The notes under the pieces were generated by a model. The model was not told where the DNA came from. It was given only the letters and a program-made list of their open reading frames with translations, and did no database searches. A DNA stretch of 64,000 nt. It comes from Hemiscyllium ocellatum (taxonomy: Eukaryota). The DNA lies in NCBI RefSeq assembly GCF_020745735.1, contig NC_083423.1, forward strand, positions 18,228,001 through 18,292,000, written 5' to 3'. Positions 12,591 through 38,727 of the stretch are shown here, piece after piece (the stretch's first letter is position 1; the number at the start of each line of letters is the position of its first letter). Position numbers and translations under genes: made by a program.

Positions 12591-13357
12591 AAAAGAGAGC
12601 TTTCCTTTTGAGTTGAGAACCCGATATTGTTATTAAATGTGAATTTCTACCCATACTGTCAAGAACAGCAAACTTAAATTGATCTTTGTTGAATAGGCCA
12701 ATTATTGGCCAGAGGATGGCACTCTCAAGAAGCTGTTATGCTCCCAATACCACAAGGGGCCTGCAGCCTGATTGCTTGTTAATTAATGTAAGAAGGTACT
12801 TGCTGTTTGCTGCAGATAGTCGTTCTGCCACCAATGTGGGTTTCCTGAAAATGGTTTGGAGTTGGGACTGTGCCAGGAAACTGGCCAGTGGTGTGAAATG
12901 ATATCTCCTGCTTGGCTTAGTTTCTGTGCCCTCATCAGGCAAAACCCCTGTTTTAAATCTGCTATGTCAAAAATTTTAATCATACTTTTCAAATTTGCAA
13001 AAGAAACAGCTGAACATTAACCAACTAAAATGTAAATACAAGCTCTTCCTCCGGATGCCGTAAACAAATACACTGCATGTTGAGAACAAATTTGCTGACC
13101 ACATTCTGAATACAATGCATACGCACAAATATAGATGTAGTCATTTGGTCTTACAGAACTTGAGCCCTGCTGGAAAGAGATACATTTTGAACAAACTTTT
13201 TCTCTTGCACTCATCAGGACAATTCACAAGAATACCAATCTCAGAGGAAAAACCAATTGTGTGAAGAGAGTGCTGATTGGTTGGCAAGTAGACTCTGATT
13301 GGTAGAGGCATTGCCAAAGAGAATGCATGCTTTTGTAGGAAATACTTATATATATGT

Positions 13358-13667
13358 GGGCACAGTGGTTAGCACTGCTGCCTCACAGCGCCTGAGACCC
13401 GGGTTCAATTCCCGACTCAGGCGACTGACTGTGTGGAGTTTGCACGTTCTCCCCGTGTCTGCGTGGGTTTCCTCCGGGTGCTCCGGTTTCCTCCCACAGT
13501 CCAAAGATGTGCGGGTCAGGTGAATTGGCCACGGTAAATTGCCTGTAGTGTTAGGTAAGGGGTAAATGTAGGGGTATGGGTGGGTTGCGCTTCGGCGAGT
13601 CAGTGTGGACTTGTTGGGCCGAAGGGCCTGTTTCCACACTGTAAGTAATCTAATCTAATCTAATCTA
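13358..13667 (+). mobile_element. HE1-type V-SINE, full length
   Basis: tRNA-like head (CAGTGGTTAGCACTG, GGTTCAATTCC), V-domain GTGGAGTTTGCACGTTCTCCCCGTG, CR1-like tail and (TAATC)n. Confidence 0.92.
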
Positions 13668-14277: not shown

Positions 14278-14388
14278 TCAGTGAAGCACTGAACTGTAGA
14301 CAATCTCCTCTTCCTTTTGTTTGAATGTCTGCTGCAAGTTTTCCAATTGCAGTTCTGCATAACATATATTATTCCTGCTGCTCTCCTC
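14278..14388 (-). CDS. Exon 6, terminal cytoplasmic exon with two ITIMs
   Basis: Acceptor ctttcccatttttcag|GAG, phase 0. Encodes EESSRNNICYAELQLENLQQTFKQKEEEIVYSSVLH*; ICYAEL and IVYSSV match (I/V/L/S)xYxx(L/V/I). Confidence 0.88.
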   Translation of the reverse strand, partial: EESSRNNICYAELQLENLQQTFKQKEEEIVYSSVLH

Positions 14389-17300
14389 CTGAAAAATGGG
14401 AAAGATATTAATTTGTATTTACATTTTCTGTTCTTAATTTTCTGAGCGTCTATCACTCATATCAACTGCACACTTTAAAAATCGGGACCTGTTACTCTTT
14501 TTATCTCAATTTATCTCTTACCTTTTGGACTTTGTTGCTCGTCACCTGAATTTCTCATAAAATAAACTGAGCCAAGCAGACAAAGGTGTGATTTCAATTT
14601 GTTAATTTTAAAAAATGGTTTGACATATTAACAATGATTTCAGTGAGCAAATGGCTTATATTGTAACAACTGTGACATTCAAAATTAATACCATCAAACT
14701 AATCTGGGTTAGGTCTTATCATATAGCTTCAGTTCCCAATTCGTCAGTCATTGCAAAGATCTATGACTAGAAATGTTCACATTCTTGCGACCTATATTAT
14801 TCTTTCATGTATTGATTGTGTTCTTTCAGTATCAGCTCCTGCCAGCAAACGCCTGGTGTCAGTTCCTTCTGGTCATTTGCTGAAACTTATTCCTATTGTT
14901 TTCCTGGTTGGGCTCCGATCCTCCACCCTCCTTAACTCATCAAAAACTTGGCTATCTGCCATTGGCTTGGGACAGCATAGTGGTACAATGGTTAATACTG
15001 CTGCCTCAAAGCACCAGGTTCAATTCCACCCTTGGGAGGCTGTGTAGAGTTTGCATATTCTCCCCGTGTCTGCTTGAGTTTCCTCTTGGTGTTCCAGTTC
15101 TCTCCCACAGTTCAAAGATGTGCAGCTTACCTGGGTTGGCCATGCTAAATTGCCCACAGTGTCCAGGGATGTTCAGGCTGTGTGGGTTAGTCATGGGAAC
15201 TGCAGAGTTACAGGGATTGAGTAGGGAGGTGGGTGGGTGGAGGTGGGCTGCTTTTTGGAGGGTTGGTGTGGACTCAATGAACTGAATATCCTGTTTCCAC
15301 AATGTAGGGATTGTATGAATCTATGCTGTGTTCTGCCAAGTCATTCTGCTTTATCTGGTCTGGTTGGATATGAACAAACTTTTGTTAAATATGTTTAATA
15401 GGTAGTTGCAGAAGAATCCTGAATAAGGCCAGGTTTTAGGACCCTAAATTATGTGTCCATATTGTAAAAATTAAATTTACATTTATGATGCTATCTTGTC
15501 TACAGCGCAATCTTCGATTACTTGCATGATTTCCTTTTCTTCCTTGAGTTCCTTTTCTTCCTATATAAAATAAAAATTATGACATAGAAGAATATAATTG
15601 TATGTAGTTAGGTGCATTGATGCTTAATCATATGTTTCTTTTCTTACTTTAATTGTACTCATTTTCTTGATTTGATTTCTTCACGTATAACAAAACAAAA
15701 ATGAGAAATATAAACAATATTAAAGCAGAAATGGCTCCGGACACCAGGCAAAAACCAAAGGGAAAGATTTACAATAAAGCACGTACAAATGTGCATGAGA
15801 AGAATATCTATTTGCTTAATATAATCAGTTAAATTTGGTTACAAATTGTGACAACAAAGGTTAATGTTAGCAAAAAGGAACCTGGAAAGAAATACATATG
15901 ATTTATTAATCTAATTCATAACAGAATGATGTAAACACAAATGAAAAGTGTTTTGAATTATTAGTTGAGGACCATTGCTAGTACAATTAACTCTGAAACA
16001 TTGAACATTTAATTGTGACATCTAAAAGTCTGATTTGTAATAAGCATTTCATTAAGAAAGTGGAGGGACAAGCCTGGGAGTCATTGGAGATGGAACACGC
16101 TGTGTCCATCAATGCTCTGGATGCCTTTAGGGAGAGGTGGGTACCACAGAGGATACAGTACTTTATTTCTGCCTCCAACTCCATTTTGATTTAATCCCCC
16201 CCTATCTCCTAACATCATCACCGTTCCCCCCTCCCTCCCATTTTAATGACAACATTGCCCTTAACAGTCTTTGCTTGTTAAAATTCAATTGGCCACATGG
16301 GTGTTTTCCTACTGTTGGAAAAAATGAATAATAAAGTATAAACACAATGGTGTCTTCTTACTATGACACTGGGGAAAAATTGTACACAGCCACAGTGGAT
16401 TTGGGGAAAAATATAAACATTAGTGCTGGCCCTCTTGGGTGCAGTGGTATTGTGGCAGTTTTTGAAAAACAAAAAAGAAATAATTGAGAAAGGAAGTGAA
16501 GGTGGTGAGTGGGTCTTGTAGTGCAGAGGTCTTGTTGCTACCCCTGGACTAGTACCTGGGTTCAAGTCCCACCAACTCCAGAGGTGGTGTAATAACATCT
16601 CTGAACAGCTTGTTTAGAAAAATAGGATAATTTTTTTTAAAGTGGAGGGGTCAGTCTTGTTGTGTGTGATTTTTAATTTTGTGGCACAGAAGTAGAGTCC
16701 CTGCCCCAATGTCATAATGGCCCAACAGACCCATTAAAATGTTTAGTTAAGAAAGTACAATTAGCACCTGTCTAGGTCAGCAGATTGTTATTAGATTAGA
16801 TTACTTACAGTGTGGAAACAGGCCCTTCGGCCCAACAAGTCCACACCGACCCACCGAAGCGCAACCCACCCATAACCCTACGTTTACCCCTTACCTAACA
16901 CTACGGGCAATTTAGCATGGCCAATTCACCTGACCCGCACATCTCTGGACTGTGGGAGGAAACCGGAGCACCCGGAGGAAACCCAAGCAGACACGGGGAG
17001 AACATGCAAACTCCACACAGTCACCTGAGTTGGGAATTGAACCCGGGTCTCAGGCGTTGTGAGGCAGCAGTGCTAACCACTGTGCCACCGTGCCGCCAAC
17101 TATTTGTCAATGAAAGGAAAGGAATGTTGGTGATTTTGCTGCTTGTGAAACTAACTGAAAGTAAAGAAAGAGTGACTTATTAAAGAAGTTGACTTTCGGG
17201 CCCTGTTTCACTGGTTGACTCAATGATCAGCCAGAAAGTCTCCCCTTGCACAAGCAACTGGATCATTGAAGCAAGTAGATTGTTTAACTGCAGTATCAAA

Positions 17301-20300
17301 AAAAATCTTGGGTCCTTAACCTCTTTCACAACCTGAGATTAGATTAGATTAGATTACTTACAGTGTGGAAACAGGCCCTTCGGCCCAACAAGTCCACACC
17401 GACCCGCCGAAGCGCAACCCACCCAGACCTATTCCCCTACATTTACCCCTTAAGATGCTTCTTATGTGCAGTATATCTTTCCACCTTGCAAAGAGGCTTT
17501 TTGTTTTGTAAAGACTGCTGGTGCACACCGTCCACCTCAACTCCTACATCAGCTGCACGGATACCTTGGCTTGAGAACCCCAGTCAAGAGCTCTCTTCAT
17601 GGGACACTCCCACTTTCCATCAGAGACCTGAAGGGTATTGAATACAGCAGTCCTGCATAACCACAGATTGCAGTGGTTCACGGACTAACAGCCTTAACGG
17701 TTTATTTTGTGGCACTGGGGAGTTAATGGACTACATTTATGTTGATTGTGGACTTTTGCACCCCTTCTTTAATTATTTGTGAAACATTTTGTTTTGGTTT
17801 TGATTACGCTTCTGATTTTTGGACACCTGGTATGGAGGAGTGTAGGCAGATTGGAGGGCTTTCTTGTGGGTCTGTTCTTGGGCTTGGCCGGGCTGGCTAT
17901 ACCATATTCAGGCAGCAGGCTATGGAGGGAGTCATCTCTGCTAACTGTCTGCTCTTCTTCTACAGTTACATTTATAGAGTCGTAGAGTCAGAGAGCCCTA
18001 CAGCATGAAGATAGGCCCTTTGGCCCAAACTGATCCATGCCGACCAAAATGTTCATCCACGCTAACTCCGTTTCCCTGCACTTGCTTCATATCCTTCTAA
18101 TCTCTTCCTATCCATGTATTTGTCTAAATGCCTTTTAAATGTTGTTAATGCACCCACCTCAACCACTTCTGCTGGCAGCTTATTCCATATGTGAACCAAC
18201 CTCAGTGTAAAAAAGTTGCCCCTCAGGGTCCCTTTTGTTTTTATTTCCCATCTAACCTTAAACTGATGCCCTCTAGTCCTTGAGTTCCCAATCCTGGGAA
18301 AAAGACGGAGTGCTTTCATGCCTGTCATGTTCTTGTCCATCTCTATAAGATCCATCCTCAGTCTCCTACGTTTTAAAGACAAAAGTTCTAGATTACTGGT
18401 GCTGGAAGAGCACAGCAGTCCAGGCAGCATCCAAAGTGCAGCGAAATCAACATTTTGGGCAAAAGCCCTTCATCAGGAATAAAGGCAGTGAGCCTGAAGC
18501 GTGGAGAGATAAGCTAGAGGAGGGTGGGGGTGGGGAGAAAGTAGCATAGAGTACAATGGGTGAGTGGGGGAGGGGATGAAGGTGAAAGGTCAGGGAGGAG
18601 AGGGTGGAGTGGATAGGTGGAAAAGGAGCTAGGCAGGTTGGACAAGTCCAAAAAGTCATGGGGACAGTGCTGAGCTGAAGGTTTGGAACTAGGGTGAAGT
18701 GGGGGAAGGGGAAATGAGGAAACTGTTGAAGTCCACATTGAGGCCCTGGAGTAGAAGTGTTCCGAGGCGGAAGATAAGGAGTTCTTCCTCCAGGCGTCTG
18801 GTGGTGAGGGAGCAGCGGTGAAGGAGGTCCAGGACCTCCATGTCCTCGGCAGAGTGGGAGGGGGAGTTAAAATGTTGGGCCACGAGGCGGTGTGGTTGAT
18901 TGGTGCATGTGTCCCGGAGATGTTCCCTAAAGCGCTCTGCTAGGAGGCGCCCAGTCTCCCCAGTGTAGAGGAGACCGCATCGGGAGCAACGGATACAATA
19001 AATGATATTAGTGGATGTGCAGGTAAAATTTTGATGGATGTGGAAGGCTCCTTTAGGGCCTTGGATGGAGGTGAGGGAGGAGGTATGGGCACAGGTTTTA
19101 CAGTTCCTGCAGTGGCAGGGGAAAGTGCCAGGATGGGAGGTGGGTTGTAGGGGAGCGTGGACCTGACCAGGTAGTCACGAAGGGAACGGTCTTTGCGGAA
19201 GGTGGAAAGGGGTGGGGAGGGAAATATATCCCAGGTGGTGGGGGGTTTTTGTAGGTGGTGGAAATGTCGGCTGATGATTTGGTTTATGTGAAGGTTTGTA
19301 GGGTGGAAGGTGAGCACCAGGGGCATTCTGTCCTTGTTATGGTTGGAGGGGTGGGGTCTGAGGGCGGAGGTGCGTTGTGGATGTGGACGAGATGCGTTGG
19401 AGGGCATCTTTAACCACATGGGAAGGGAAATTGCGGTCTCTAAAGAAGGAGGCCATCTGGTGTGTTCTATGGTGGAACTGGTCCTCCTGGGAGGACAAAA
19501 GTTCTAGCTTGTTCAACCTCTCCCTATAACTTGAATCCAGGCAACATCTTTGTAAATTTCTTCTGCACCCTTTCCAGTGTAATAACATCCTTCCTATAAC
19601 AAGGTGACCAAAACTGAACATAATACTCAAAGTGCGACCTCACCAATGTCCTGTATAACTGCAACATAACTCCCCAACTTCTATATTCAATGACCTGACT
19701 GATGAAGACCAGTGTGCCAAAAGCCTTCTTCACTGTACTGTCTACCTGTGACACCACTTTCAGAGAACTCCAAGAATCCTCTGTTCCAGCAGATCCCTTA
19801 AGGCCTTACCATTTACAGTGAAACTCCTACCTTGATTTGATTTTCCAAAATGCAAAAACTCCATTTGCCATTTCTCAGCCCACTTCCCCAGCTGATCAAG
19901 ATCCTGCTGCAATTTCTGATAACCTTCCTCACTGTCCACAATACCACCTATTTTAGTGTCATTAGCAAACTTACTAATCATGCTTTGTACATTCTCATGC
20001 AAATCATTGATATAGATAACAAACAGCAATGGGACCAGTACCAACCTTTGAGGCATTCCACTAGTCTCAGGCCTCCAGTCTGATAAACATCTTTCCATTA
20101 CCCTTTGCTTCCTACCATCAAGCCAATTTTGTATCCAGTTTGCCAGGTCATCTTGGATCCCATGTAATCTAACCTTCCAGAATAGTCTACCATGTGGATC
20201 ATAATCAAAGGCTTTACTGAAATCTATGTAGACTATGTCCACCACCCTATACTCCTCAACCTTCCTGGTCACCTGTGGCTAATGATAATGCAAAAATATC

Positions 20301-23300
20301 AGCCAAGGCCATCGCAATTTCTTCTCTAAGCTCTTGCAGCGTTCTTGGATATATTTGTGCCTGAGTGTCATTGGAGAAGGAGCATGTGATGTCTTTAGAG
20401 AGAGGTTAGCACTATTGGGGATATAGTACTTTATTTCCCCTTCCAACTCCATTTTGATTTAGTTCCTTCCTGTTCTCCCTAATCCTCCTTCCTCTCTCAT
20501 TTGGTGGTTTGTATTGTCCATGAGGGGCTTTGCTTGTAAATGCTCAATGAGTTGCATGGGTGTTTTTACAGGTGATGGTTGCTAGTTTAAAAGTAAGGCA
20601 AAACAAAAAGTCACAGTGATTCTAGTGGTAGGAAGATACTCCGTTATGTGTGATAACACTTCGGGGTAGAAAACAAAGTCTTATCCTCATTGTTTAGCAG
20701 ACCTGCCAACTTCAGTGTGCTTGTGACCTGCCCGTACAGGGAACCCCTAAACCACAAGCAGAAGAAGCATTGAATTGAACTTACATACTAATTCAGGGAG
20801 TTAGCGATACCACTGTCCAAACAGTTGCTGACTCAAAATACTTAAGTCAGAGAGATGTACAGCGACGGAAACAGACCCTTCAGTCCAACTCATCCATGCC
20901 GACTAGACTTTCCAACCTAATCTAGTCCCACTTGCCAGTACCTGGCCCATATCCCTCCAAATCCTTCCCATTCATATACACATCCAGATGCCTTTTAAAT
21001 GTTGCAAGTGCACCAGCCTCCATCACTTCCTCTGGCAGCTTATTCTATACAATCACCACCCTCTGCGTGAAAAAGGTGCCTCTTAGGTCTCTTTTATATC
21101 TTTCCCCTCTCACCCTAAACCTATGCCCTCTAGTTCTGGTTCTGGTCTCCCCCTCCCCAGGGAAAAGACTTTGTCTATATGTCCTATCCATGCCCCTCAT
21201 GATTTTATAAACCTCTAGAAGGTCACCCCTCAGCCTCCAAAACTCCAGGAGAAACAGGCTCAGCCTATTCAACCCCTCCCTAAAGCTCAAACCATCCAAC
21301 CCTGGCATCATCCTTATAAATCTTTTCTAAACCCTTTCAAGTTTCACAACATCCTTCTGATAGGAAGGAGACCAGAATTGCATGCAATATTCCAAAAGTG
21401 GTCTAACCAACGTCCTGTACAGCTGCAATATGACCTCCCAACACCTATAGTCAATACTCTGACCAATAAAGAAAAGCATAATTGCCAACTGTTAGTTTTA
21501 TTTAAATATTCTTATAATGGTCATGATAACCACGTTTAAACGAGCTCCTATTAATATTTTTCAAACAAAATATATGTGCTGCTTATGGACACATTGTAAT
21601 CTGGTTTTGTTACCTCCAGGTCCAAATAAGGATCATAGATGATAGCTTTATGCTCATGATCGGATATTATTAAATTAAATCATGTAAAATCTTGATGTAT
21701 TGGTGTTTAGCACAACTGGTACAGTCTTTATATCATGGGAAAGTAGCATAATACAGAGGTATTCCTTTCACATCAAGTATAAATCATAAATAGAATCGAA
21801 GTCAGTGATTTTTAAAAAGCTGTTTAGAATTAAACATTCAGAGAAATGTCAGATGAAGACAATAGCAATCATCATACATAATCTGTAATCGCAGCTATTA
21901 TTGTTCAAAATGAAAGTAACCCATGAGCAGTGGTATTTTTTTGACTGGAGAAATAATTCATGTCATGATCACTCCTTGATAAATATTTAATATGGCATAT
22001 AACAATAAGATCTTTAAAAAGTACACGAGGTGACCACGTTCCTAAATAAGTGATGAATGAATGAACATTGTACCCAATCAGTGAGACATCATTTACAAGT
22101 GGATTTAGAGACAGTGGCTTGGAATCAGAAAGGTGGAATCAAAATCAAATCCACATATAAGCTTAATTATGAACAGAGTTTGTCGAAAATCTGTTCTCTT
22201 AGAAAAAAGGCAATTGAGCAACTGGTACAATGCAAGACTTTGAACAACTAAATGGATTGCATATGGTGATTGTAATCAGTGATTTTGTACAAAAGACAGA
22301 GATACACCTAACCAGGGAGATGCAAAACTTGGAGTATATTATTAGTAATTATGATAATATTTTATATCTCCAGTCAATTGAGTGAATAAAATAAATCTAA
22401 TGGGATGCTGGTAGATAGCTGATTCCAGGGGAAGGGGGAGTAAGAATTGCGGTTGCACGATCAGTGTTTGAAAACAGATTAAGTTCCTCATGGAGTAAAC
22501 TGCAGTATTTTATTTGCTGGAGAACCACTTACCATGTATGTATTTGATGAGAAAAAGCACAAGAAAAATAGTACAAGCTATTCCACCACAAATGGAAAGT
22601 AAAATGAATGGCAGCATCCAAAGATGTCCATTATGATCTGTAAAATATGAGTGTGTATGAGTTATGCAGACAACCTGTTAAAACTCAAATTGAATACATT
22701 TAGATCAAGCAAAGAACTCAGATGCTGGGAGTCTGAAACAAACAGACAAATTGCTGGAGAAATTCAGCAAGTCTGGGAGTATCTATGGAGAGAAAACAGA
22801 GATAACATTTCAAGTCCAGTGACCCTTCTTCAGAACTGAGTCTGGAAACTGAAGGGGTTTGGTTAGATCAGTTGACTGGACAGCTGATTTAGGATACAGA
22901 GTAACACAAACAGCATTGGTTCAATTCCTGGTCCAGCTAAGGTTTCTATGAAGGACTCTCCTCTTCCCATCCAGGTTGCTTGAGGTATGCCGACCCTCAG
23001 ACTAAACCACCACCAATCATCTCTCTCTCATGAGAGAACAACCCTATGATCTAGTAGAATTATGGCAAATTTACCTTAGAGGTGTAAATATGATGAAGAA
23101 AGGCAAAGGCTTTTCAACCCCAGTATTGATCCCTGTGGCAAGTTCCCTTCTTAAAATTACTCCTTTACTCCACCTCTCTGTCTTCCGATAGTTTGCCAAT
23201 TCTCTATCCTTGGTAATATTCTGGCCCCAAAACTGTACGCCATCTATTTCACCCACAGCAAATGAAACAACTTTTCCACCACATATTAAAAGAAAAATAA

Positions 23301-26300
23301 CACAGATACACATTCTGAAGAGGTTGATAATGTTACATCTTACCTTCATCTCTTTGGTGTACATGAATGAGGATGGTGTGGTTTGTCCGGAATTGTGAAG
23401 CAGGATGCTGAATTATACAAGTGAATTCGTTTGAGTTATTGCAGTTTTCAGTGGAGATGTTCACAATGGCTATGTAGTTGTACATTCCATCAGGGTTGGA
23501 GATCTGGCTTTCATTGGTGAGCTGGTTGATGAGGCAGGTTGTATGAAACATCATTATGATTGGTTTTGGATAAAAATCGTGTGCTGAACAGTTGATTATA
23601 GCTGAAGGTGAAGAAACTGTTTCTTTAGAAGATATAAATAGCCGAAGAGAAGGAGGAGCTAGTTATAAAAAGGAGGGCAGAGAATAGATTAATAATAGAA
23701 TCAGATTAATATTGGCTCAATGTGCAATTGAACCATTCAGACTTCAAAGCTATTAAAACTATGTAAACAGATATCTTGAACAGATACCTAAATTTAAGGA
23801 AGGGATGTTTTTAGTAATAAATCACATGTTAAGTGGTACCAACTATTTACATATTTCCCTTTTTGCTCACTCTCCAGTTTTGTTTTAGTCTTTCACCAGA
23901 ATGGCAATTGCACTTCTCACATGAAATCTTTCCCTTCTTCCGGATTTTACGTTCCTCTTGGTCCATCCACTCTATTCCCATCCTATCTGCTTTGCTGGTT
24001 CAGATCTGTTAGACTTGTCATTATTTGTTACTATTTTCAGCCTGACCCCTATTCTAGCATCGGATGCGAATTGCTCAATTTTCTATTTGCTCACTCACTC
24101 ACAGTTCCACCAGGCTCTCCAGTCCCTGCCCCATTAACACTATGTTGTCCCTCCAATAACTCCCGGCGCCTCGCTGATTTGTCTTCTTCCCGTCTCTTAT
24201 CAGTTTTTGTCCATTCTTTCCTCCCATTGCCTGAATTGAATAAGCAAGGCATGCACCACTCACGAGAGCACTAACAATATCACCACCACCAACCGAATCA
24301 TGTCAGCTACATTGGATTCCCAACAATTCTGACTTGAGTGGATTCTTCCCAACCCTGTAGACACGGATTCAGGAAGTTCTCACGAAAGGGCGACTCCCCA
24401 GTTCATGTCGGATTAATTTAGCAGGAACGGTGTCAAATGGACACTGTGACTCGCACGGCATCGACTGGTACAACAGCAAATGCCCACTTGAAGTCAAGTT
24501 GGTGATGCCACTGGGGTGGTCCAAGGACTCCTCTCCTACTCTTATTAGAGCGTCAGATGGTTGAGGTTAGAAGAGTGCCTGGTAATTATTCAGTTCAACA
24601 AAGACTTAACACACTTGTTAAGAGCGCGACAGGCACAATGTGTAGAGTTCCCTGCAGATACTTTAATTTCATGGTTAATTATGAAATTTTATTGACACTA
24701 AGGAAAATCATTGCTGTTCTCCGCCCCTCTCCAATGTTTTGCAAAAGGAAATTAGCTTCTTTCAATGATATACCACGCTGAAAAGGTCAAACAAAACTCT
24801 GCGGCTGCAAGAAATTTGTTGAAGAATTATACTTAAAATGTTAACTTGTCCCTTCTTCTGCAGATGTGCTCACTGACATGCTGCCTGTTTCCAGTGTTTC
24901 CGAAAAGTTAATAGGCTTAACTCATAAATCAAGAAATGTCACTTAATTATTGTTAAGTGCAATGTTTACCGTGTGCTTTTTATTTTAAAGAGAGAATTGA
25001 GGTGAAACCTACGGCGGAATTGTCAACTTATATACAATTATTAAAAGAAAAAGGGCAGCGGCGTGTCATGGCTGTCTTTACAAAGCCGAGAACAAACTGA
25101 ATGCTACTAGGATGTGTATATTGGATGGATTGGCCATGCTACATTGCCCCGTAATGCCCAGGGAGGTGCAGGCTGGTTGGATTAGCCATGGGAAATGTGG
25201 AGTTACAGGGATTGAGTGGGTCTGGGTGGGATGATCTTCGGAGGGTCGGCGTGGACTCCCTGAAACCTGGACAGATTCTATGATTCTACGGCGGACTGTA
25301 GAATCACCAAACCAGAACCAAATTGAAGGGTTGGGAACTTCTAAACCTTCAAGAAGTCAACAAATCTTTGCTTCAATATTATATGCATGGAAGGAAAGTT
25401 GTGTTTTTTGATCAGTAATGGGAAAATTTGTTAATACTGTCAGAGTTTTCCTCATTATTTCATTTGCATTAATCCTGCTAACGAATTGGGAGAAGTATGA
25501 TCCACTTTAGAGTAGAATAAATGGAATTTGAACCTATATATTACGATTTGATGCTGATACAAGTCCGTATCCCAGCATTTTTATCCCAAAGATTGGTGAA
25601 TAATTGTCTCTCCTCCACTTCCCCACGACAAACGAGCAAATTATTGTGACGGAAATGTACAATAGCTTTCTAAGTTTGCACCGTTGGCGTTTATTTTTGT
25701 TACTTTCTTTCTTGACTCATTTTCCTAATATTATTTTCCCTTCATCATTTCTGAAAATGCATCCCCCGTTGCTGATGTACAGCGCCTGAGATTCTCTCCA
25801 GCACTTCTCCTGTGAATACTCTTCATGTTTGACCTTGGAAAGTCAAAGTCACAAAGCTGTTCTGGCGATGAGGATTCTTCCGCCTTCCATCATTGTTATT
25901 AATGGACATTTCCATCTGGAATTCTTACAATGCATTGAGAGAGAGAACCTTACAAACCCTGGCGTTCTGGGGTCAAGTGTAACAATTCTACCATCATGCT
26001 GGCTAACATTAGCTAACTGCACAGAGTGGCGATTAAACTTGAAGCGTCCCATCTTTATGACTTATTCATTGCTGCTAAAGTTTTCACCAGTATTCCAAGG
26101 CATATTAAGAATTCGATTGTAAAATAGTTACCTGTTACACTCAGCATCGTTCCTTTGCCAGTTCTTTTACCACTTGGCGGAGGCGCGGTCTGAAACATCT
26201 CACAGTGGTAGCGTCCTGTGTCACTGATTTGAACATCAGTAATCCTTAAGGTGAATGCTTTCTTATGGAAATTATGCATTGCAAAATATCGATAATGGGT

Positions 26301-27496
26301 CACTTGAGATACTCTGGTCGATAGGTTGGCAATGATCTTTGGAGGCGCTTGGTTATTATTGCGAAAACTCCACCATGCTTCGAATCTTTGTAGGTTAGGT
26401 ACTGAATGGAAACAATCTAACGAGATCAAGCCTCCCTTTTCGACGGAAAGATGCGCAAGCTGTTGTAAATCTCGCTGTCCATCTTGAGAAAAGTTAAATG
26501 TATGTATTATTAGCAATGAATGTGAATATATGAAAAGCCTGGGCTACAGTTATAGGGCTAGTTAACTCACTTAATCCCTTTGTTCAAATAGAGATTTTTT
26601 TTCTGTATTCACAGTAATGTGTCTTATGTTTCTTATGCAAAATATTAAATATATTTTCAATCTTGTTCGGCCATAATTTTGAAGATTCTCCGACAGGGGT
26701 TTAAAAATAAACCAGAGAAATTTAATACATTGTGTTAAAAAGTCAGAGACGGTCACAAAGTTCCTGAATGTGTGTGATTATAAGAACATCACTGGTAATG
26801 AAATATATGGGAAATGGTCAAATAAGCAGATCTATTTACAAAATAAACTTATGTAGAATAAAATAATATAGAATGGAGGATATTATTGTCTGTAACCACC
26901 TTACTAACTGAAAACATTATGTCATGTTACAACAAAAATGTTATAATGATACAAAACAACACTGTATGAAAAGTGAATTGAGGAACATCAACTCACGAGC
27001 GGCACATGAACAAGTGATTTAAACACCAGTGAATCAAATGGGTACAAAATTTGTTTTGGAAAGTTTAAGTACGTTTCCACAGATTTTAGTTACACTTATC
27101 AGCGTAGAGGCGGTTTGGTATGCTGCACAATTAAATCAAACAATGGCAATTAAAACCGGGTGGGAGTTCCTTTAGACATCAGTAAAAACAAAGTTTACAT
27201 ATATTTGTAAATATATTAAATGCAGCTGATATAGGCAAAATTGTAAAGTTCCTATTTTAGTTTGAAAAGCAGTGGTAACTACAAACTCAGTGGAGAAATA
27301 ATTAAATTATAGAGAATTGACTCATATCATGACTGGCAATGTTACTTTTCACGATAAATGTCACAGCTATAGTTTTCTGCAACTCTAACTTCAAGTTTAA
27401 TGCCCACCCAATTACAAACAGCGCTTCAGTTCGATAAGTACCTGTAAATGTTAACAGCAGCTGTAGAAAAGTGTAGAAAATTTTCATTTCGCACAT
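14278..27496 (-). CDS. Six-exon gene for a non-rearranging VJ-C1-TM-ITIM immunoglobulin-superfamily receptor (SIRP/PRARP/VJC1-like architecture), ~335-338 aa
   Basis: Exons 27442-27487 (or from ATG 27496), 26132-26482, 23344-23658, 22533-22637, 15481-15560 and 14278-14388 have GT/AG boundaries with phases 1,1,1,1,0. They join into 1008 nt (336 codons including stop) with no internal stop: signal peptide, V-set domain, C1-set domain, TM, basic juxtamembrane segment, two ITIMs. Confidence 0.85.
14975..15325 (+). mobile_element. HE1-type V-SINE, diverged, in intron 5 of the Ig receptor gene
   Basis: Same head, V-domain and tail as the copy at 13358. Confidence 0.8.
15481..15560 (-). CDS. Exon 5, basic juxtamembrane cytoplasmic exon
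   Basis: Acceptor tttttattttatatag|GA, donor AAT|GTAAAT, 80 nt. Converts phase 1 to 0 as required to join exon 6. Encodes GRKGTQGRKGNHASNRRLRCRQDSIIN. The donor is weaker than the others. Confidence 0.7.
16792..17097 (-). mobile_element. HE1-type V-SINE
   Basis: Reverse-complement copy beginning with the (GATTA)n tail. Confidence 0.9.
17336..17452 (-). mobile_element. 5'-truncated HE1 SINE / CR1 tail
   Basis: (GATTA)n followed by CAGTGTGGAAACAGGCCCTTCGGCCC. Confidence 0.8.
17985..20340 (-). mobile_element. CR1 LINE 3' part (RT C-terminus), split by a Penelope insertion
   Basis: YIDFSKAFD..HGRL, ISKFANDTKIG, RERLNKLELLS|LKRRRLRMDLIE. Confidence 0.88.
18392..19493 (-). mobile_element. Penelope-like GIY-YIG element fragment nested in CR1
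   Basis: Homologous to 406-1444; flanked by the 14-bp TSD GACAAAAGTTCTAG (18378-18391, 19494-19507). Confidence 0.92.
20845..21480 (-). mobile_element. CR1/HER1 LINE 3' fragment
   Basis: RLRGDLLEVYKIMRG..FFTQRVV and the 3' UTR. Confidence 0.88.
22533..22637 (-). CDS. Exon 4, transmembrane exon
   Basis: Acceptor atattttacag|AT, consensus donor CATG|GTAAGT, 105 nt, phase 1-1. Encodes DHNGHLWMLPFILLSICGGIACTIFLVLFLIKYIH, with no charged residue in the helix. Confidence 0.9.
23344..23658 (-). CDS. Exon 3, Ig C1-set domain
   Basis: Acceptor ctcctttttataactag|CT, donor GAAG|GTAAGA, 315 nt, phase 1-1. Encodes APPSLRLF..CSAHDFYPKPI..NPDGMYNY..FTCIIQHP with the C1 hallmarks FYP, NxDGxY and CxxxH. 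Confidence 0.92.
26132..26482 (-). CDS. Exon 2, VJ-type Ig V-set domain
   Basis: Acceptor ttttctcaag|AT, donor ACAG|GTAACT, 351 nt, phase 1-1. Encodes DGQRDLQQLAHLSVEKGGLISLDC..AWWSF..FTLRITDVQISDTGRYHCEMFQTAPPPSGKRTGKGTMLSVT with canonical Cys, Trp, DxGxYxC and the J-like GxGTxLxV motif. Confidence 0.95.
27442..27496 (-). CDS. Exon 1, leader peptide (MCE)MKIFYTFLQLLLTFT
   Basis: Hydrophobic leader ending ACAG|GTACTT (phase 1). From the second ATG it is 46 nt, the typical Ig-type leader exon size. Confidence 0.75.
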
Positions 27497-27867: not shown

Positions 27868-28172
27868 AGATTAGATTAGATTCGATTCTCTACAGTGTGG
27901 AAACAGGCCCTTTGGCCCAACGAGTCCACACCGACCCTCCAAAGAGTAACCCACCCAGACCCATTCCCCAACTAATGCACCTATCAATATGGACAAATTA
28001 GCATGGCCAATTCACCTGACCTGCACATCTTTGGACTGTGGGAGGAAGCCGGAGCAAACCCGCACAGATACGGGGAGAATGTGCAAACTCCACACAGATA
28101 GTCACCCGGGGCTTGATTCAAACCCTGATCCCTGGCGCTGTGAGGCAGCGGTACTAACCACTGAGCCAACGT
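27868..28172 (-). mobile_element. HE1-type V-SINE
   Basis: (GATTA)n tail, V-domain and tRNA head in reverse complement. Confidence 0.85.
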
Positions 28173-30399
28173 GCTGTCCTAGCAGTCACATATTTCTATG
28201 CAGTTTGTTAAATATAAATATAACAATTTAACATATCATTTCATGCAGAGTTTCCGAGGCTTTATCTCTACCAGTTTGTGGGTTGATCTATATGTGGTCT
28301 ATTTTCTTATGTATACAATTTTTCCTGTATTATATTTCTATAATCCCAATTCATCCATCCATTTATCTAGAAGTCAACGAGTTGCACTGTTAATTTGTAC
28401 ACCATGCAGCACCCAGATAATGTTAATTCATTCATCCAGTTATCTAACTGTAAGCTAGCAGCAGTACTTTATTTCTTTATTTTTTCATGGGGTGTGGATA
28501 TTACTGGCAAAGCCAACATTTCTTGCCCAATAAACCTTGAACTGTGTGCTTTGCTTAGCCATTTCAAAGGCAGATAGGAGTCATCCATGTTGCTGTAGGT
28601 TAGGAGTAACAAGTAGGTCAGGCCAGGTAAGGATGACAGATTTCCTTCACAAAAGGACTTTAGTGAACTAGATGGGTTTTTACAACATTTGAAAATAGTT
28701 TAGAATCACCATCCCTGACATTCAGTTCCAGACTTTATAATTGAATTTATATTTGATCTGTTGCTTTTGTGGGATTTGAACCCTTTTGCTTACCATGCCA
28801 TTTCACACAGTTGAACATCCAGGCTGCTTGCCTTGCTGGTCAGCAGTCCTCGTCAAGGGGGCATATATCTTGTTGTATGGCACTGTGCTGTGCCAATCTC
28901 ATACCTGTACAATATGCCAGCAGCCTATGTAGCAACACTCTGTATGTGCATCAAGCAGGCACCATATCTCAAACTGCAAGGGGAAAATCCCTCACCAAAG
29001 TCCATGGATGTCTCTGACAGTCAGGAGTCTCACAAAAGTGTCAAGGACAACCTTTGATGCCAATCTATCAGATAGGCCACAGTCAAGGTGGTTTTGGTCA
29101 GGGGCTCTGTGCCTCTGCCTCTGAAGTGGGTCATTGTCAGTCCTACGGCTCCTTACTGACCATTCGGGGAAAAGGGGAATGATAGGGCTAACATGGTCAG
29201 GAGATATCTAGATATCAACCAAAGGTTAATGCACTTCTCAAGTTGGACTGTTCAATTATGCCACTCAAGGCCCACAGAAAGTAAGAGGAAAGGGGGGATA
29301 AAGCAGGGGGCAGTGGGGGCAGACTGCTACCACAGGAAGGAGTTTTGAGAACTTTTCCTTGGAATTGGGGCAACAGACCAGAGGGAAAGGGTGGTGATAA
29401 CTGTGGAGGGGGCTAATAGTATTTGAAGTGACAACACAGTAAAGTTTGGATGAAAATGGGGTGCTGCAGGAAGGAGGGAGGTTTGTCCACAGTGAGGAAC
29501 TTCAATGAGGGTGGCAGCAATGTATGACCACATTTGGCATGGTCACCTCTTGTGCTAGGTGCTGGGGATGGTGGAGAGCTGCAGACCCATATAGACAGGT
29601 TGGGTGGGGTCCTGAGGAGATGTGAAGCCTATGGAGTTCACAGAAAAGCTACCAGGAAGGGATGTTTCAGGCTTCACTGAGTGGGGGTGTGTGTAGGAGC
29701 AGGCTTTCTGATGCAAGTAAATTCTGTCCCTAAGAGTGTTGTCCAATAATTTCCCTCCCACTGATATAAGGCTCACCAACCTATGATTTCCTGGATTATC
29801 CTTGTTACCCTCATAAGCAAAAGAATAATTCTCCAGTGTTCCTGGAACTCGTTTATAATGATTTGGCCGCAGTCATCCCCTCCCTTAATATCCTGGGATA
29901 GATCCAATCAGGTCTTGGGGACTTATCTGATTTCATGTTTTGCAAACACCTGTTTCCTCCTTAATTTTCACATGCTGTAGAATATCAATAACCCCCTCTC
30001 TAATTTTACCATCATCCATGTTCTTCTCCTTGGTGAAAACTGATTCAAAGTATTTATAAAAAACCTCACTCACTTTCTGTGATTCCATGCACAAGCTCTC
30101 TCCTTTCCCATGAGTGGATCCAGCCTTTCCTTAGCTTGCCCCTTGCTCCTAATATATGTATAAAATGTCTTCTGATTCTCCCTAATTCTCTCCTCCCTCT
30201 GACCTATCACCTTCTCCCTCATCTTCATTCACCAATCACTTTCCCAGCTATCTCCCCCCAACCCCACCCCCTCTCCCATTTATCTCTCAGTGGACCCACA
30301 AGCCTCATTCCTGATGAAGGGTTTATGCCCAAAACATTGATTTTCTTGCTCCTCGGATGCTGCCTGACCTGCTGTACATTTTCAGCACCACACTGTCGA

Positions 30400-33974: not shown

Positions 33975-35075
33975 CCGGACAAGTGCGAGATGATACATTT
34001 TGGATGATGCAATTCCAGAATGAACTATACAGTAAATGGAAACGTTCTGGGGAAAATTAATGTACAGAGAGATCTGGGTGTTCAGATCCATTGTCTCATG
34101 AAGGCAGCAACACAGGTCAGTAGAGTGGTCAAGAAGGCATACGGCATGCTTTCCTTCATCAGACAGGGTATTGAGTACAAGAGTTGGCAGGTCATGTCAC
34201 AATTGTACAAGACTTTGGTTCGGCCACCTTTGGAATATTGCGTACGGTTCTGGTTGCCACATGACCAAAAAGATGTGGATGCTTTGGAGAAGGTGCAGAG
34301 GAAGTTCACCAGGATGTTGCCTGGTATGGAGGGTGTTAGCTATGACGAGAGGTTGAGTAGGCTAAGATTATTTTCATTGAAAAAAAGGTAGTTGAGGGGG
34401 GACCTGATTGAGGCCTACAAAATCATGAGCGGTGTAGACAGGGTGGATCGCAAGAAACTTTTTTCCCAGAGTGGAGGACTCAGTTACTAGGGGTCATGAG
34501 TTCAAAGTGAGAGGGGAAAACTTGAGGAAAATATCTGGGGCACAGTGGCTCAGTAGTTAGCACTGCTGCCTCACAGCGCCAGGGACCCAGGTTCAATTCC
34601 ACCCTTGGGTGACTGTCTGTGTGGAGTTTGCTCATTCTCCCTGTGTCTACGTGGATTTCCTCCGGGTGCTCCAGTTTCGTCCCACAGTCCAAAAATGTGC
34701 AGGATAGGTGAATTGGCCATGCTAAATTGCCCATAGAGTTAGGTGCATTAGTCAGGGGTAAACATGGGAACTGGGTCTGGGTGGGTTACTCTTCGGAAGG
34801 TCAGTGTGGACCTGTTGGGCCAAAGGGCCTGTTTCCACACTGTAGGGAATCTAATCTAATACTTTACGCAGAGGGTGGTGGGTGCCTGGAATACATTGCC
34901 AGTGGAGGTGGTGGGGCAGGAATGATAGCATCATTTAAGATGTATTGAGACAGATACATGAATGGAGCAAAGGAATACAGATCCTTAGGAAATAGATGGC
35001 AGATTTAGATCGAGGTTACGGACCGGTGTAGGCTTGGAGAGCCTAAGGGTCTGTTCCTGCGTTGTAATGTTCTTT
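33975..35075 (+). mobile_element. 5'-truncated CR1 LINE with a nested HE1 SINE (about 34535-34860)
   Basis: LEYCVRFW..KVQRKFTRMLPG; the SINE interrupts the coding end. Confidence 0.88.
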
Positions 35076-38374: not shown

Positions 38375-38727
38375 GAATCATATAATCCCTACAGTGTGGA
38401 AGCAGGCCATTTGGCCTATTGAGTCCACAATCAGCACTCTGAAAAGCATCCTACCAGGATCCATCTCCCTATCCAATCCCCATAGCCCTGAATTTCCCAT
38501 GGCTTATTGACCTATCTTCTACATCTGTGGACATTATGAGCAATTTAGCATGGCCAATCCACCTAACCTGTTCATCTTTAGATTGTGAGAGGAAACTCAA
38601 GCACCGGGAGAAAACTCATGTAGACACGGGTAGAATGTGCAAATTCCACACAGACAGTCACCCAAGACTGGAATCAAACCTAGGCCTCTGGTGCTGTGAG
38701 GCAGTAATGCTAACCACTGAGCCACTG
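38375..38727 (-). mobile_element. Diverged HE1-type SINE
   Basis: Reverse-complement head, V-domain and tail. Confidence 0.8.

What the first reader, a model, noticed from the sequence alone, without database searches (positions are those of the whole stretch)
14278..27496. Intact shark gene for a non-rearranging, antigen-receptor-like VJ-C1 inhibitory receptor
Seen in sequence: six phase-compatible exons give leader, V(J), C1, uncharged TM and a two-ITIM tail; V and J-like strands are fused in one exon with no RSS. Established knowledge: C1-set domains occur mainly in Ig, TCR, MHC, tapasin, SIRP and B7/BTN-type proteins, and germline VJ-C1 genes (PRARP/VJC1-type, SIRP) are discussed as relics of the pre-RAG antigen receptor. 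Inference: this is a cartilaginous-fish inhibitory checkpoint or self-recognition receptor with a single V-C1 ectodomain (SIRP-alpha has V-C1-C1). It may be unannotated or misannotated, since four of the six exons are not recovered in their coding frame by the ORF track.
Basis: partly seen in the sequence, partly recalled or inferred. Interest (0 to 1): 0.9.

Follow-up and report, generated by a model that had tools for sequence, protein, structure and literature searches.

The report
Shark V-C1 inhibitory receptor gene
This is an intact six-exon shark gene for a cell-surface protein with one antibody-like variable domain, one antibody-like constant domain and an inhibitory signalling tail; it belongs to an old, conserved vertebrate family whose database entries carry only automatic names and for which I found no published study.

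Summary
On the minus strand, 27496-14278, six GT-AG exons with compatible phases encode 338 aa:
- a leader;
- a V-set domain whose J-like G strand (GKGTMLSVT) lies in the same exon, with no RSS;
- one C1-set domain;
- an uncharged TM segment;
- a tail with two ITIMs (ICYAEL, IVYSSV).

The RefSeq whale-shark orthologue uses the same six exons, with the first five of identical length. The protein is about 94% identical to Chiloscyllium plagiosum 'immunoglobulin kappa light chain-like' X1. Apparent one-per-species orthologues occur in sharks and rays. Distant relatives (25-30% identity) occur in gar, axolotl, turtles and alligator.

All of these carry only automatic names (Ig kappa-like, SIRP-alpha-like, CEACAM1-like, uncharacterized). 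So the gene is not new to databases, but I found no paper describing it.

It fails the defining tests for several known families:
- SIRP, because it has one C1 domain;
- the CD28 family, because it has a C1 domain;
- UrIg;
- rearranging receptors.

PRARP membership could not be tested.

The V domain carries the CTLA-4/CD28X loop signature YxCx6PPPx5GxG. The most likely function is an inhibitory immunoreceptor that recruits SHP phosphatases; this is inferred, not shown. The 80-nt exon 5 could act as an ITIM on/off splice switch.

The scan has flagged other VJ-C1-ITIM genes elsewhere in this genome.

The parts
27442..27496 (-). Exon 1: start codon and signal peptide (MCEMKIFYTFLQLLLTFT + first base of next codon), ends in phase 1
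   Evidence: sequence, GT donor; model; same 55-nt exon in the whale-shark RefSeq gene
26132..26482 (-). Exon 2: V-set domain with the J-like G strand fused in the same exon, phase 1-1
   Evidence: Pfam V-set E 6.2e-13. PDB phmmer best hits are Ig kappa VL and TCR V-alpha. No RSS.
26132..26210 (-). F strand, FG loop and G strand: YHCEMFQTAPPPSGKRTGKGTMLSVT. It matches the CTLA-4/CD28X signature YxCx6PPPx4/5GxG.
   Evidence: Sequence. The motif is quoted from PMC11599192. It is fully present in most family members with this region; the ray copy has PAP and some rows GxS, GxE or GxK.
23344..23658 (-). Exon 3: C1-set constant domain, phase 1-1. It has four Cys (canonical pair plus QTTC/ENC) and an FYP motif; the C-strand Trp is replaced by Phe.
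   Evidence: Pfam C1-set E 2.5e-9. All 14 family C domains match C1-set. PDB hits are Ig CH domains, UrIg2 C domains and SIRP. The AF2 model shows a seven-strand domain with pLDDT above 90.
22533..22637 (-). Exon 4: short stalk and transmembrane segment, phase 1-1
   Evidence: The orthologue model has a helix at residues 244-276.
22546..22623 (-). Hydrophobic TM core LWMLPFILLSICGGIACTIFLVLFLI, with no charged residue
   Evidence: Sequence
15481..15560 (-). Exon 5: 80-nt cytoplasmic exon (RKGTQGRKGNHASNRRLRCRQDSIIN), phase 1-0. Its inclusion sets the ITIM reading frame of exon 6.
   Evidence: tblastn of the catshark orthologue P0003. Splice candidates. The same 80-nt exon is in the whale-shark gene. 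C. plagiosum isoforms are.
14278..14388 (-). Exon 6: end of the cytoplasmic tail with both ITIMs and the TGA stop (14280-14278)
   Evidence: Conserved in shark, ray and gar homologues.
14350..14367 (-). ITIM 1: ICYAEL
   Evidence: Sequence. Fits (S/I/V/L)xYxx(I/V/L). Conserved as I[CY]Y[ATV][EQ]L in the elasmobranch orthologues with a full tail.
14287..14304 (-). ITIM 2: IVYSSV, 21 residues after the first Tyr. It reads TVYSSV, an ITSM-type motif, in C. plagiosum.
   Evidence: Sequence..
15561..22532 (-). Intron 4 (7 kb), filled with a Penelope-like retroelement and SINE copies
   Evidence: Pfam GIY-YIG at 18692-19174 and RVT_1 at 19763-20278

Best explanation
**What it is.** The locus is an intact gene, apparently single-copy in each species, for a type I membrane protein of 338 aa. 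Its parts are a signal peptide, one V-set domain, one C1-set domain, a short stalk, an uncharged TM helix and a 62-residue tail with two ITIMs.

- The V domain's G strand is a germline J-like GxGTxLxV.
- Its FG loop carries a CTLA-4-type PPP motif.
- The two ITIM tyrosines lie 21 residues apart.

**Family.** It is the bamboo-shark-lineage orthologue of an uncharacterised IgSF family. That family is present in sharks and rays, has a partial V-only match in a chimaera, and has distant relatives in gar, salamander, turtles and alligator.

**Most likely mechanism (inferred).**
1. The V domain, with the PPP-bearing FG loop on its CDR3-equivalent face, binds a cell-surface ligand.
2. Src-family kinases phosphorylate the two ITIM tyrosines.
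3. The phosphotyrosines recruit the tandem SH2 domains of SHP-1/SHP-2, which dampens activation of the cell carrying the receptor.

**Possible splice switch.** Exon 5 is 80 nt, not a multiple of three. Skipping it shifts exon 6 into a frame that ends after five residues. Alternative splicing could therefore switch between an ITIM-bearing long form and a signalling-dead short form, as in CEACAM1-L/S.

**Shown:** gene structure, domain types, absence of RSS, conservation, and moderate purifying selection.

**Inferred:** expression, ligand binding, inhibitory signalling, and use of the splice switch.
For: - **Gene model.** The model has canonical splice sites and an open 338-aa frame.
- **Domains.** Pfam V-set and C1-set both score above their curated cut-offs. 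All 14 family C domains match C1-set.
- **Structure.** An AF2 model of the 94%-identical orthologue has a confident two-Ig-domain ectodomain (pLDDT mostly above 90) and a TM helix. Its best PDB matches over both domains are Fab chains and gamma-delta TCR chains. In Swiss-Prot models it matches SIRP-alpha, tapasin, B7-H6 and TCR-beta.
- **No rearrangement signals.** No RSS was found.
- **Orthologues.** They were found by exhaustive HMMER and profile searches and named by their sources.
- **Identity.** About 94% to C. plagiosum X1, 80% to whale shark, 57% to catshark, 47% to an electric ray, and 25-30% to gar, turtle and axolotl.
- **Exon structure.** The whale-shark RefSeq gene has the same six exons. 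Gar and turtle genes have the same layout.
- **Selection.** dN/dS against whale shark is 0.45 overall and 0.37 in V. Exons are 88% identical, introns about 78%.
- **Orthology.** In the V tree the family is one group (support 87/54; present in 86% of bootstrap trees), and the elasmobranch branch follows the species tree.
- **Tail motifs.** Both ITIMs are conserved across the elasmobranch orthologues with a full tail, and gar has two ITIM-like motifs.
- **Splice forms.** C. plagiosum RefSeq isoforms X1-X4 include exactly the exon-5-skipped and alternative-donor short-tail forms.
Against: - No transcript evidence was obtainable for this genome or its relatives. Exact-product look-ups found only genome records. 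Expression therefore rests on RefSeq models that I could not inspect.
- No ligand, cell type or phosphatase binding is known for any family member.
- Tetrapod relatives mostly lack ITIMs. Only sea turtles keep one SLYTAV motif. Inhibitory signalling is therefore not a family-wide constant.
- dN/dS of 0.45 to 0.7 in the C1, TM and tail regions is only moderate constraint.
- An ITIM-like sequence does not prove inhibitory function.
Confidence: 0.72

Rival explanations
1. [quoted passage not shown] 2019, J Immunol). As I recall, that is a non-rearranging VJ IgSF family with an ITIM, described in chicken with orthologues in bony fish, amphibians and reptiles. Under this reading the gene would be a new member of a named family, with the same proposed mechanism.
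For: The paper is cited as a VJ gene family by PMC10751288 and PMC11599192. The taxon spread of the distant relatives found here (gar, axolotl, turtles, alligator; none in mammals) resembles what I recall of PRARP. The V with J-like strand plus C domain plus ITIM layout is similar.
Against: The paper and its sequences are not held, so no sequence comparison was possible. No source names any family member PRARP. PRARP was defined in chicken, yet neither the two word-filtered searches seeded with tetrapod members nor the named subset of the exhaustive V-domain search (about 30 of its 150 listed hits were named) showed an avian homologue. From memory, PRARP's C domain was called C2, whereas here C1-set outscores C2-set_2 by 37.8 to 24 bits.
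Confidence: 0.22
2. It is a SIRP-family member, as the RefSeq names for catshark, electric ray and one bamboo-shark isoform suggest. That would make it a SIRP-alpha-like myeloid inhibitory receptor for a CD47-like ligand.
For: Automatic names read 'tyrosine-protein phosphatase non-receptor type substrate 1-like'. SIRP-alpha is the top Swiss-Prot structural match. SIRP-alpha and SIRP-gamma C1 domains appear among PDB sequence hits of the C-domain profile. Both proteins have a J-like V, C1-set domains and ITIMs.
Against: The ectodomain is V-C1, not V-C1-C1. In the V tree the one SIRP-like row kept (cobra) groups with the Ig light-chain V rows, not with this family. SIRP hits in the exhaustive search are weak (E about 1e-4 to 1e-9, with multi-domain sums). 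The PPP loop is not a SIRP feature. The tail has two tyrosine motifs where SIRP-alpha has four.
Confidence: 0.05
3. It works mainly as a B7-, nectin- or CD200-type counter-ligand: a V-C membrane protein displayed to a receptor on another cell. The ITIM tail would give only reverse signalling.
For: Pfam CD80-like C2-set_2 also passes its cut-off on the C domain (24 bits against 21), and 8 of 14 members hit it. B7-H6, CD276, ICOSL, PD-L2, CD80, CD200 and nectins are among the structural matches. A B7-like/NLR gene is reported close by (scan note s1-207340), and a V-set+NACHT gene flanks the gar orthologue.
Against: C1-set scores clearly higher than C2-set_2 in every member. To my knowledge B7 V domains lack the J-like GxG bulge and PPP loop, which are features of the receptor side (CTLA-4/CD28). 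Two conserved ITIMs with SH2-compatible spacing are typical of receptors.
Confidence: 0.1
4. It is a non-functional relic in this genome: a pseudogene or a gene that is never expressed.
For: No transcript data were available. One 7-kb intron is full of retroelements.
Against: The ORF is intact across six exons, and all splice sites are canonical. Orthologous ORFs are intact in at least 10 cartilaginous fishes. dN/dS is below 1, and exons are more conserved than introns.
Confidence: 0.03

Closest known systems
SIRP-alpha (PTPNS1/SHPS-1)
   Same: A non-rearranging V domain with a J-like G strand, C1-set constant domain(s), an uncharged TM and cytoplasmic ITIMs that recruit SHP-1/2. It is the top Swiss-Prot structural match, and RefSeq borrows its name for some orthologues.
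   Different: SIRP-alpha has V-C1-C1 and four tail tyrosines. This protein has V-C1 and two. Its V domain has a PPP FG loop and does not group with the one SIRP-like V row kept in the tree.
CD28/CTLA-4 family, especially CTLA-4 and CD28X (PMC11599192)
   Same: The FG-loop signature YxCx6PPPx4/5GxG is present exactly. The gar copy's GIGNGT matches what I recall of CTLA-4's GIGNGT. PD-1 and CD28HL3 of that family carry ITIM/ITSM tails. A sawshark protein I read as CD28H-like by motif is a weak V-domain hit (P0129, E 1.9e-4).
   Different: The family is defined by a single extracellular V domain, and this protein has an added C1 domain. It has no YxxM, YxNx or EYEDM motif. CTLA-4 and CD28 are not among the top 60 PDB sequence hits of the V profile, so the likeness is confined to the FG loop and G strand.
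UrIg / UrIg2 (shark non-rearranging VJ-C1 'antibodies'; PMC12227049; PDB 9dmx)
   Same: Elasmobranch genes that do not rearrange, with a single-exon VJ and C1-set domains. UrIg2 is the top PDB hit of the C-domain profile, although that score sums three domains of about 20-27 bits each.
   Different: UrIg2 has nine C domains and, per the paper, is expressed in liver and gill rather than by lymphocytes. The paper mentions no ITIM. This gene has one C1 domain, two ITIMs and a PPP loop. The paper says UrIg genes are retained only in elasmobranchs, whereas this family has bony-vertebrate relatives.
PRARP (Fu et al. 2019)
   Same: From memory and from citing papers: a non-rearranging VJ IgSF receptor with an ITIM, absent from mammals.
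   Different: It could not be compared, because its sequences and paper are not held. No avian relative of this family was found.
CEACAM1-L/S splice switch
   Same: A small cytoplasmic exon whose length is not a multiple of three decides whether the two-ITIM tail is read. Here that is the 80-nt exon 5. C. plagiosum isoforms X1 and X4 correspond to the long and short forms.
   Different: The ectodomains are unrelated (CEACAM1 has an N domain plus C2-type domains). This is an analogy of regulation only, and it is unverified by RNA.

Membership tests
Immunoglobulin superfamily, V-set + C1-set | Domains score above the curated Pfam thresholds for V-set and C1-set | tested here: met
   V-set 49.3 bits (cut-off 26) and C1-set 37.8 bits (cut-off 21). 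C1-set is matched in 14 of 14 family members.
Rearranging antigen receptors (IgL/TCR) | [quoted passage not shown] | tested here: not met
   The V and J-like parts are contiguous in exon 2. There is no canonical RSS in 64 kb and only weak off-target matches in a relaxed scan.
Non-rearranging VJ-type V domains | Canonical J motif (F/W)GxGTxLxV at the end of the V exon | tested here: inconclusive
   TGKGTMLSV keeps GxGTxLxV but has Thr in place of Phe/Trp. In the family alignment T, L and V are invariant and the first Gly nearly so; the second Gly is S, E or K in four rows.
SIRP | Three-domain ectodomain V-C1-C1 | tested here: not met
   There is a single C1 exon between the V and TM exons.
SIRP | V domain groups with SIRP V domains | tested here: not met
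   In the V tree the one SIRP-like row kept (cobra) groups with the Ig light-chain V rows, while this family forms its own group. Reference sampling was small.
CD28/CTLA-4 family (as defined in PMC11599192) | A single extracellular V domain and no other Ig domain | tested here: not met
   A C1-set domain is present.
CD28/CTLA-4 family | CDR3-region signature YxCx6PPPx4/5GxG (CTLA-4/CD28X type) | tested here: met
   YHCEMFQTAPPPSGKRTGKG. It is fully present in most family members with this region; the ray copy has PAP and some rows lack the second Gly.
CD28/CTLA-4 family | Family-specific cytoplasmic motif (YxxM, YxNx or EYEDM) and conserved synteny | tested here: not met
   The tail has only two ITIMs. 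Synteny with pudp/sts/anos1 was not testable. The gar copy lies next to GTF3C6 and an NLR gene.
UrIg/UrIg2 | VJ followed by several C1 domains (nine in nurse-shark UrIg2); no ITIM is mentioned in the paper | tested here: not met
   This gene has one C1 domain and two ITIMs. UrIg2 features are from PMC12227049.
PRARP | Sequence orthology to chicken PRARPA/B | not testable with these tools
   The paper and its sequences are not held. No protein named PRARP and no avian hit appeared.
ITIM-bearing inhibitory immunoreceptors (functional class) | One or more (S/I/V/L)xYxx(I/V/L) motifs in the tail and a TM without a charged residue | tested here: met
   ICYAEL and IVYSSV lie 21 residues apart, and the TM is uncharged. 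The motifs are conserved in sharks, rays and gar.
ITIM-bearing inhibitory immunoreceptors (functional class) | Tyrosine phosphorylation, SHP-1/SHP-2/SHIP recruitment and inhibition of activation | not testable with these tools
   This needs biochemistry.

The most novel reading that the evidence does not exclude
The family could be a surviving C1-bearing sister, or ancestral form, of the CD28/CTLA-4 receptors. That would make it a V-C1 chain with the CTLA-4-type PPP/GxG ligand-binding loop, linking antigen-receptor-like VJ-C1 chains to today's V-only co-stimulatory and co-inhibitory receptors. In sharks it would act as an ITIM checkpoint receptor for a B7-like ligand, possibly the B7-like/NLR gene reported nearby. 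A similar V-set+NACHT gene also flanks the gar copy.
Probability: 0.12. Interest if true: 0.85.

Novelty: new variant of a known kind. Interest (0 to 1): 0.5.

Why it matters
Non-rearranging genes that join a J-bearing V domain to a C1 domain are rare. They are the main material for reasoning about what the RAG transposon invaded roughly 500 million years ago.

The recent shark literature I could read treats UrIg and UrIg2 as the elasmobranch examples. This family adds a membrane-bound, ITIM-signalling V-C1 gene. It is conserved from sharks and rays to gar, salamander, turtles and alligator. No mammalian, avian or teleost member turned up in these searches.

Its FG loop carries the CTLA-4/CD28X signature. 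It therefore also bears on where the CD28 family came from. The paper that extended that family says it found no precursor.

In practice it gives a clean, apparently single-copy target for three things: shark checkpoint biology, a ligand hunt, and re-naming a set of misleading RefSeq entries.

If it turns out to be PRARP, the value falls to extending that family to cartilaginous fish.

Tried and rejected
- **Alternative exon 5.** A 32-nt candidate at 14553-14522 had good splice scores. I rejected it because catshark and whale-shark proteins align to 15560-15481 instead.
- **Direct E4-E6 splice as the main form.** This gives a five-residue tail without ITIMs. I kept it only as a possible short isoform.
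- **RSS.** No exact match. The three relaxed matches are weak and none lies inside the V exon.
- **Paralogues or other Ig exons in the window.** tblastn with eight family proteins found only the six exons. The rest of the window is LINE, Penelope and SINE debris.
- **Naming the family from databases.** Two profile searches and one single-sequence search returned only automatic or empty names, and no bird, mammal or teleost.
- **PRARP and UrIg primary papers.** Not held. A search on the term 'PRARP' returned mostly unrelated acronyms.
- **Transcript evidence through exact-product look-ups.** Only genome records were found, and the C. plagiosum isoform was not on record.
- **Synteny.** The 10-kb flanks of the whale-shark and turtle genes held no neighbour. 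The gar neighbours (NLR, GTF3C6) have no tblastx match in this window. Positions outside the window cannot be queried.
- **Structure searches.** Foldseek against PDB and Swiss-Prot models matches every V-C type protein about equally and does not discriminate between families.
- **V-profile search of PDB for CTLA-4 or CD28.** Neither is in the top 60 hits, which are antibodies, pIgR and TCR.
- **Apparent closeness to UrIg2.** Its top rank is a sum over three domains, so there is no special closeness.

Full report
**1. What is in the sequence**

The feature lies on the minus strand. Six-frame translation and the raw sequence around each candidate boundary give six exons with GT-AG introns. I assembled them.

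| Exon | Coordinates | Length | Content |
|---|---|---|---|
| E1 | 27496-27442 | 55 nt | leader |
| E2 | 26482-26132 | 351 nt | V domain with J-like strand |
| E3 | 23658-23344 | 315 nt | C1 domain |
| E4 | 22637-22533 | 105 nt | stalk and TM |
| E5 | 15560-15481 | 80 nt | cytoplasmic |
| E6 | 14388-14278 | 111 nt | two ITIMs and TGA stop |

- The phases run 0-1, 1-1, 1-1, 1-1, 1-0, 0-stop.
- The joined frame is 1017 nt (338 aa) with no internal stop.
My splice scan offered a 32-nt exon at 14553-14522 and an 80-nt exon at 15560-15481. Homologues decide for the 80-nt exon.

**2. Domains**

- Pfam gives V-set for exon 2 (E 6.2e-13) and C1-set for exon 3 (E 2.5e-9). Both are above the curated cut-offs. 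CD80-like C2-set_2 is a weaker second hit on exon 3.
- Against PDB sequences, the V exon is closest to Ig kappa VL and TCR V-alpha.
- The C exon is closest to Ig heavy-chain constant domains and to shark UrIg2.
- Exon 2 ends with GKGTMLSVT. This keeps the J core GxGTxLxV, but Thr replaces the usual Phe/Trp.
- Only 14 codons separate the F-strand cysteine from this motif, so there is no room for recombination signals.
- The window holds no canonical RSS. A relaxed scan gives three weak matches, none within the V exon.
- The TM stretch has no charged residue.
- The tail holds ICYAEL and IVYSSV. Both fit the ITIM consensus, and their tyrosines are 21 residues apart.

**3. Homologues and the gene model**

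An exhaustive HMMER search with the V exon and a profile search found full-length relatives.

| Species | Identity to this protein | Name given by the source |
|---|---|---|
| Chiloscyllium plagiosum (X1) | about 94% | immunoglobulin kappa light chain-like |
| Rhincodon typus | 80% | immunoglobulin kappa light chain-like |
| Stegostoma tigrinum | 78% over V-C1 | immunoglobulin kappa light chain-like |
| Scyliorhinus canicula | 57% | SIRP-alpha-like |
| Scyliorhinus torazame | 63% | uncharacterized protein |
| Heterodontus, Pristiophorus, Heptranchias, Mustelus | 57-59% | uncharacterized / Ig kappa-like / CEACAM1-like / uncharacterized |
| Narcine, Hemitrygon (rays) | 45-47% | SIRP-alpha-like / uncharacterized |

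A partial Callorhinchus entry also exists.

- The source species is therefore probably a hemiscylliid close to C. plagiosum.
- The whale-shark RefSeq protein maps onto its genome as the same six exons. The first five have identical lengths and the splice sites are conserved.
- Gar and turtle genes have the same layout.
- Against whale shark, the CDS is 88% identical, while the alignable introns are about 77-80%.
- dN/dS is 0.45 overall and 0.37 in V.
- In a V-domain tree the family forms one group (support 87/54; present in 86% of bootstrap trees).
- The elasmobranch part of the tree follows the species tree: bamboo shark with whale shark, then catshark, then bullhead shark. Squalomorph sharks and rays sit as unresolved deeper branches.
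- I read this as one orthologue per species under moderate purifying selection.

**4. Deeper relatives**

At 25-30% identity the same architecture appears in several bony vertebrates:
- spotted gar, with two ITIM-like motifs;
- axolotl, with a tandem (V-C1)x2 form;
- many turtles;
- alligator.

All of these entries are 'uncharacterized'. Family-wide conserved features are:
- the two V cysteines and the C-strand Trp;
- the YxC...PPP...GxGTxLxV block, which is nearly conserved (the ray copy has PAP, and the second Gly varies in a few rows);
- in the C domain, an FYP motif and four cysteines;
- a Pfam C1-set match in all 14 C domains tested.

Most tetrapod tails have lost the ITIM tyrosines. No mammal, bird or teleost member appeared. 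Note that two of the searches were limited by the word filter.

**5. Structure**

An AlphaFold2 model of the C. plagiosum protein, built with the family alignment, gives two confident Ig domains (pLDDT mostly above 90).
- The first domain has the full V-type strand set.
- The second has seven strands, which fits C1.
- A TM helix and a disordered tail follow.
- Foldseek's best two-domain PDB matches are Fab heavy and light chains and gamma-delta TCR chains.
- Among Swiss-Prot models it matches SIRP-alpha, tapasin, B7-H6, TCR-beta, Ig lambda, B7-H3, CD200R and others about equally.

This confirms a V-C ectodomain of the antigen-receptor, SIRP or B7 type. It cannot assign a family.

**6. Comparison with known families**

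- **SIRP.** It shares the J-like V, C1-set domains and ITIMs. However, SIRP has two C1 domains and four tail tyrosines, and its V domain does not group with this family.
- **CD28/CTLA-4.** The paper that extended this family (PMC11599192) gives the CTLA-4/CD28X signature YxCx6PPPx4/5GxG.
  - The shark protein has exactly this (YHC, six residues, PPP, five residues, GKG). So do most of its relatives.
  - That family is defined by a single V domain and by other tail motifs. CTLA-4 and CD28 are not among the top 60 PDB sequence hits of the V profile.
  - The likeness is therefore local.
- **UrIg/UrIg2 (PMC12227049).** These are the published shark non-rearranging VJ-C1 genes. UrIg2 has nine C domains and is expressed in liver and gill, and the paper mentions no ITIM. 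UrIg2's top rank in the C-profile search is a sum over three domains of about 20-27 bits each.
- **PRARP (Fu et al. 2019).** It is cited as a VJ family. The paper and its sequences are not held, so membership is open. I put it at about one in five, mainly because no avian relative was found.

**7. Mechanism**

Shown:
- an intact, conserved gene for a type I V-C1 membrane protein;
- two conserved ITIMs and an uncharged TM;
- no rearrangement signals.

Inferred from established ITIM biology (SIRP-alpha, PD-1, PECAM-1, KIR):
1. Ligand binding through the V domain brings the tail near Src-family kinases.
2. The two phosphotyrosines engage the tandem SH2 domains of SHP-1/SHP-2.
3. Activation is damped.

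The PPP loop sits where CTLA-4 and CD28 contact B7. A B7-like ligand is therefore a reasonable guess, not a result.

A further inference concerns exon 5. It is 80 nt, so skipping it puts exon 6 into a frame that stops after five residues. C. plagiosum RefSeq isoforms X1 (long), X4 (exon-5 skip) and X3 (internal donor with frameshift) are exactly these forms. The pattern resembles the CEACAM1 long/short switch. I could not check RNA.

**8. Surroundings**

- The rest of the window is repeat-rich. There is a LINE with endonuclease and RT at 45.2-48.0 kb, RT fragments at 50-51 kb and probably 60-64 kb, and a Penelope-like element inside intron 4.
- No second Ig gene is present.
- In gar, the orthologue lies head-to-head with a V-set+NACHT+LRR gene and next to GTF3C6.
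- A scan note reports a B7-like/NLR junction 9.4 kb before this window. This may be a conserved neighbourhood, but I could not read that DNA. NLR genes are also numerous in fish.
- The scan has also flagged several other VJ-C1-ITIM genes on other pieces of this genome. I did not test whether they are related to this one.

**9. Verdict**

- The gene is not new to databases, because orthologues are modelled in many cartilaginous fishes.
- It carries misleading names. As far as the held literature shows, it is undescribed.
- It does not meet the defining features of the SIRP, CD28 or UrIg families.
- I class it as a new variant of a known kind (non-rearranging V-C1 inhibitory IgSF receptors), of moderate interest.
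- Interest would be higher if the CD28-family link or a checkpoint function were shown. It would be lower if the gene proves to be PRARP.

Noticed in passing
window 15481-15560 (exon 5) with 14278-14388 and 22533-22637: Exon 5 is 80 nt (3n+2). Skipping it reads exon 6 in another frame and ends the protein after GEQQE, with no ITIMs. RefSeq isoforms X1, X3 and X4 of the C. plagiosum orthologue are the long, alternative-donor and exon-skip forms. This suggests a CEACAM1-like long/short tail switch.
   Followed up: partly
L001:1-4205 (gar, minus strand) and, per scan note s1-207340, about 9.4 kb before this window's start: The gar orthologue lies head-to-head with a gene whose product hits V-set, NACHT, NLRC4_HD2 and LRR, and it lies next to GTF3C6. 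A first-stage note describes a B7-like/NLR junction just outside this window. This may be a conserved neighbourhood, or an Ig-NLR fusion gene worth its own look. The gar NLR region has no tblastx match inside this window.
   Followed up: partly
window 18692-20278 (minus strand), inside intron 4: A Penelope-like retroelement remnant. One ORF hits GIY-YIG (18692-19174) and another hits RVT_1 (19763-20278). Similar GIY-YIG-type ORF text recurs at window 1-1134.
   Followed up: partly
window 45189-48027 (+), 50133-50915 (-), 60100-63900 (+): LINE copies. One has an AP-endonuclease ORF (45189-46319) followed by an RT ORF (46466-47365). An RT fragment lies at 50133-50915. ORFs at 60-64 kb look RT-like by eye, but the one tested (62142-62840) hit no Pfam family. 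These copies explain the strong GC skew at 44-48 kb and 60-64 kb.
   Followed up: partly
window 13349-13654, 16899-17180, 27950-28228, 34483-34785, 38443-38778: A short interspersed repeat that translates to a recurring '...RRCEAAVLTTVP...' ORF-let in either orientation. It is probably a shark SINE family, with copies flanking the gene and inside intron 4.
   Followed up: no
window 23344-23658 (C1 exon) and alignment A4: The family's C1 domain has two extra invariant cysteines (QTTC and ENC) besides the canonical pair. It also lacks the canonical C-strand Trp (MMF here). A second intradomain disulfide is likely and would be a family hallmark.
   Followed up: partly
protein P0001 (Stegostoma tigrinum XP_059510499.1): This RefSeq model replaces the TM exon with another short exon. 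It therefore reads exons 5 and 6 out of frame and ends without a TM or ITIMs. It is probably a mis-model or a minor isoform. The same alternative frames exist in this window.
   Followed up: partly
protein P0022 (Ambystoma mexicanum XP_069483859.1): The axolotl relative has the V-C1 unit duplicated in tandem, (V-C1)x2, before the TM, and it has a short tail without an ITIM.
   Followed up: no
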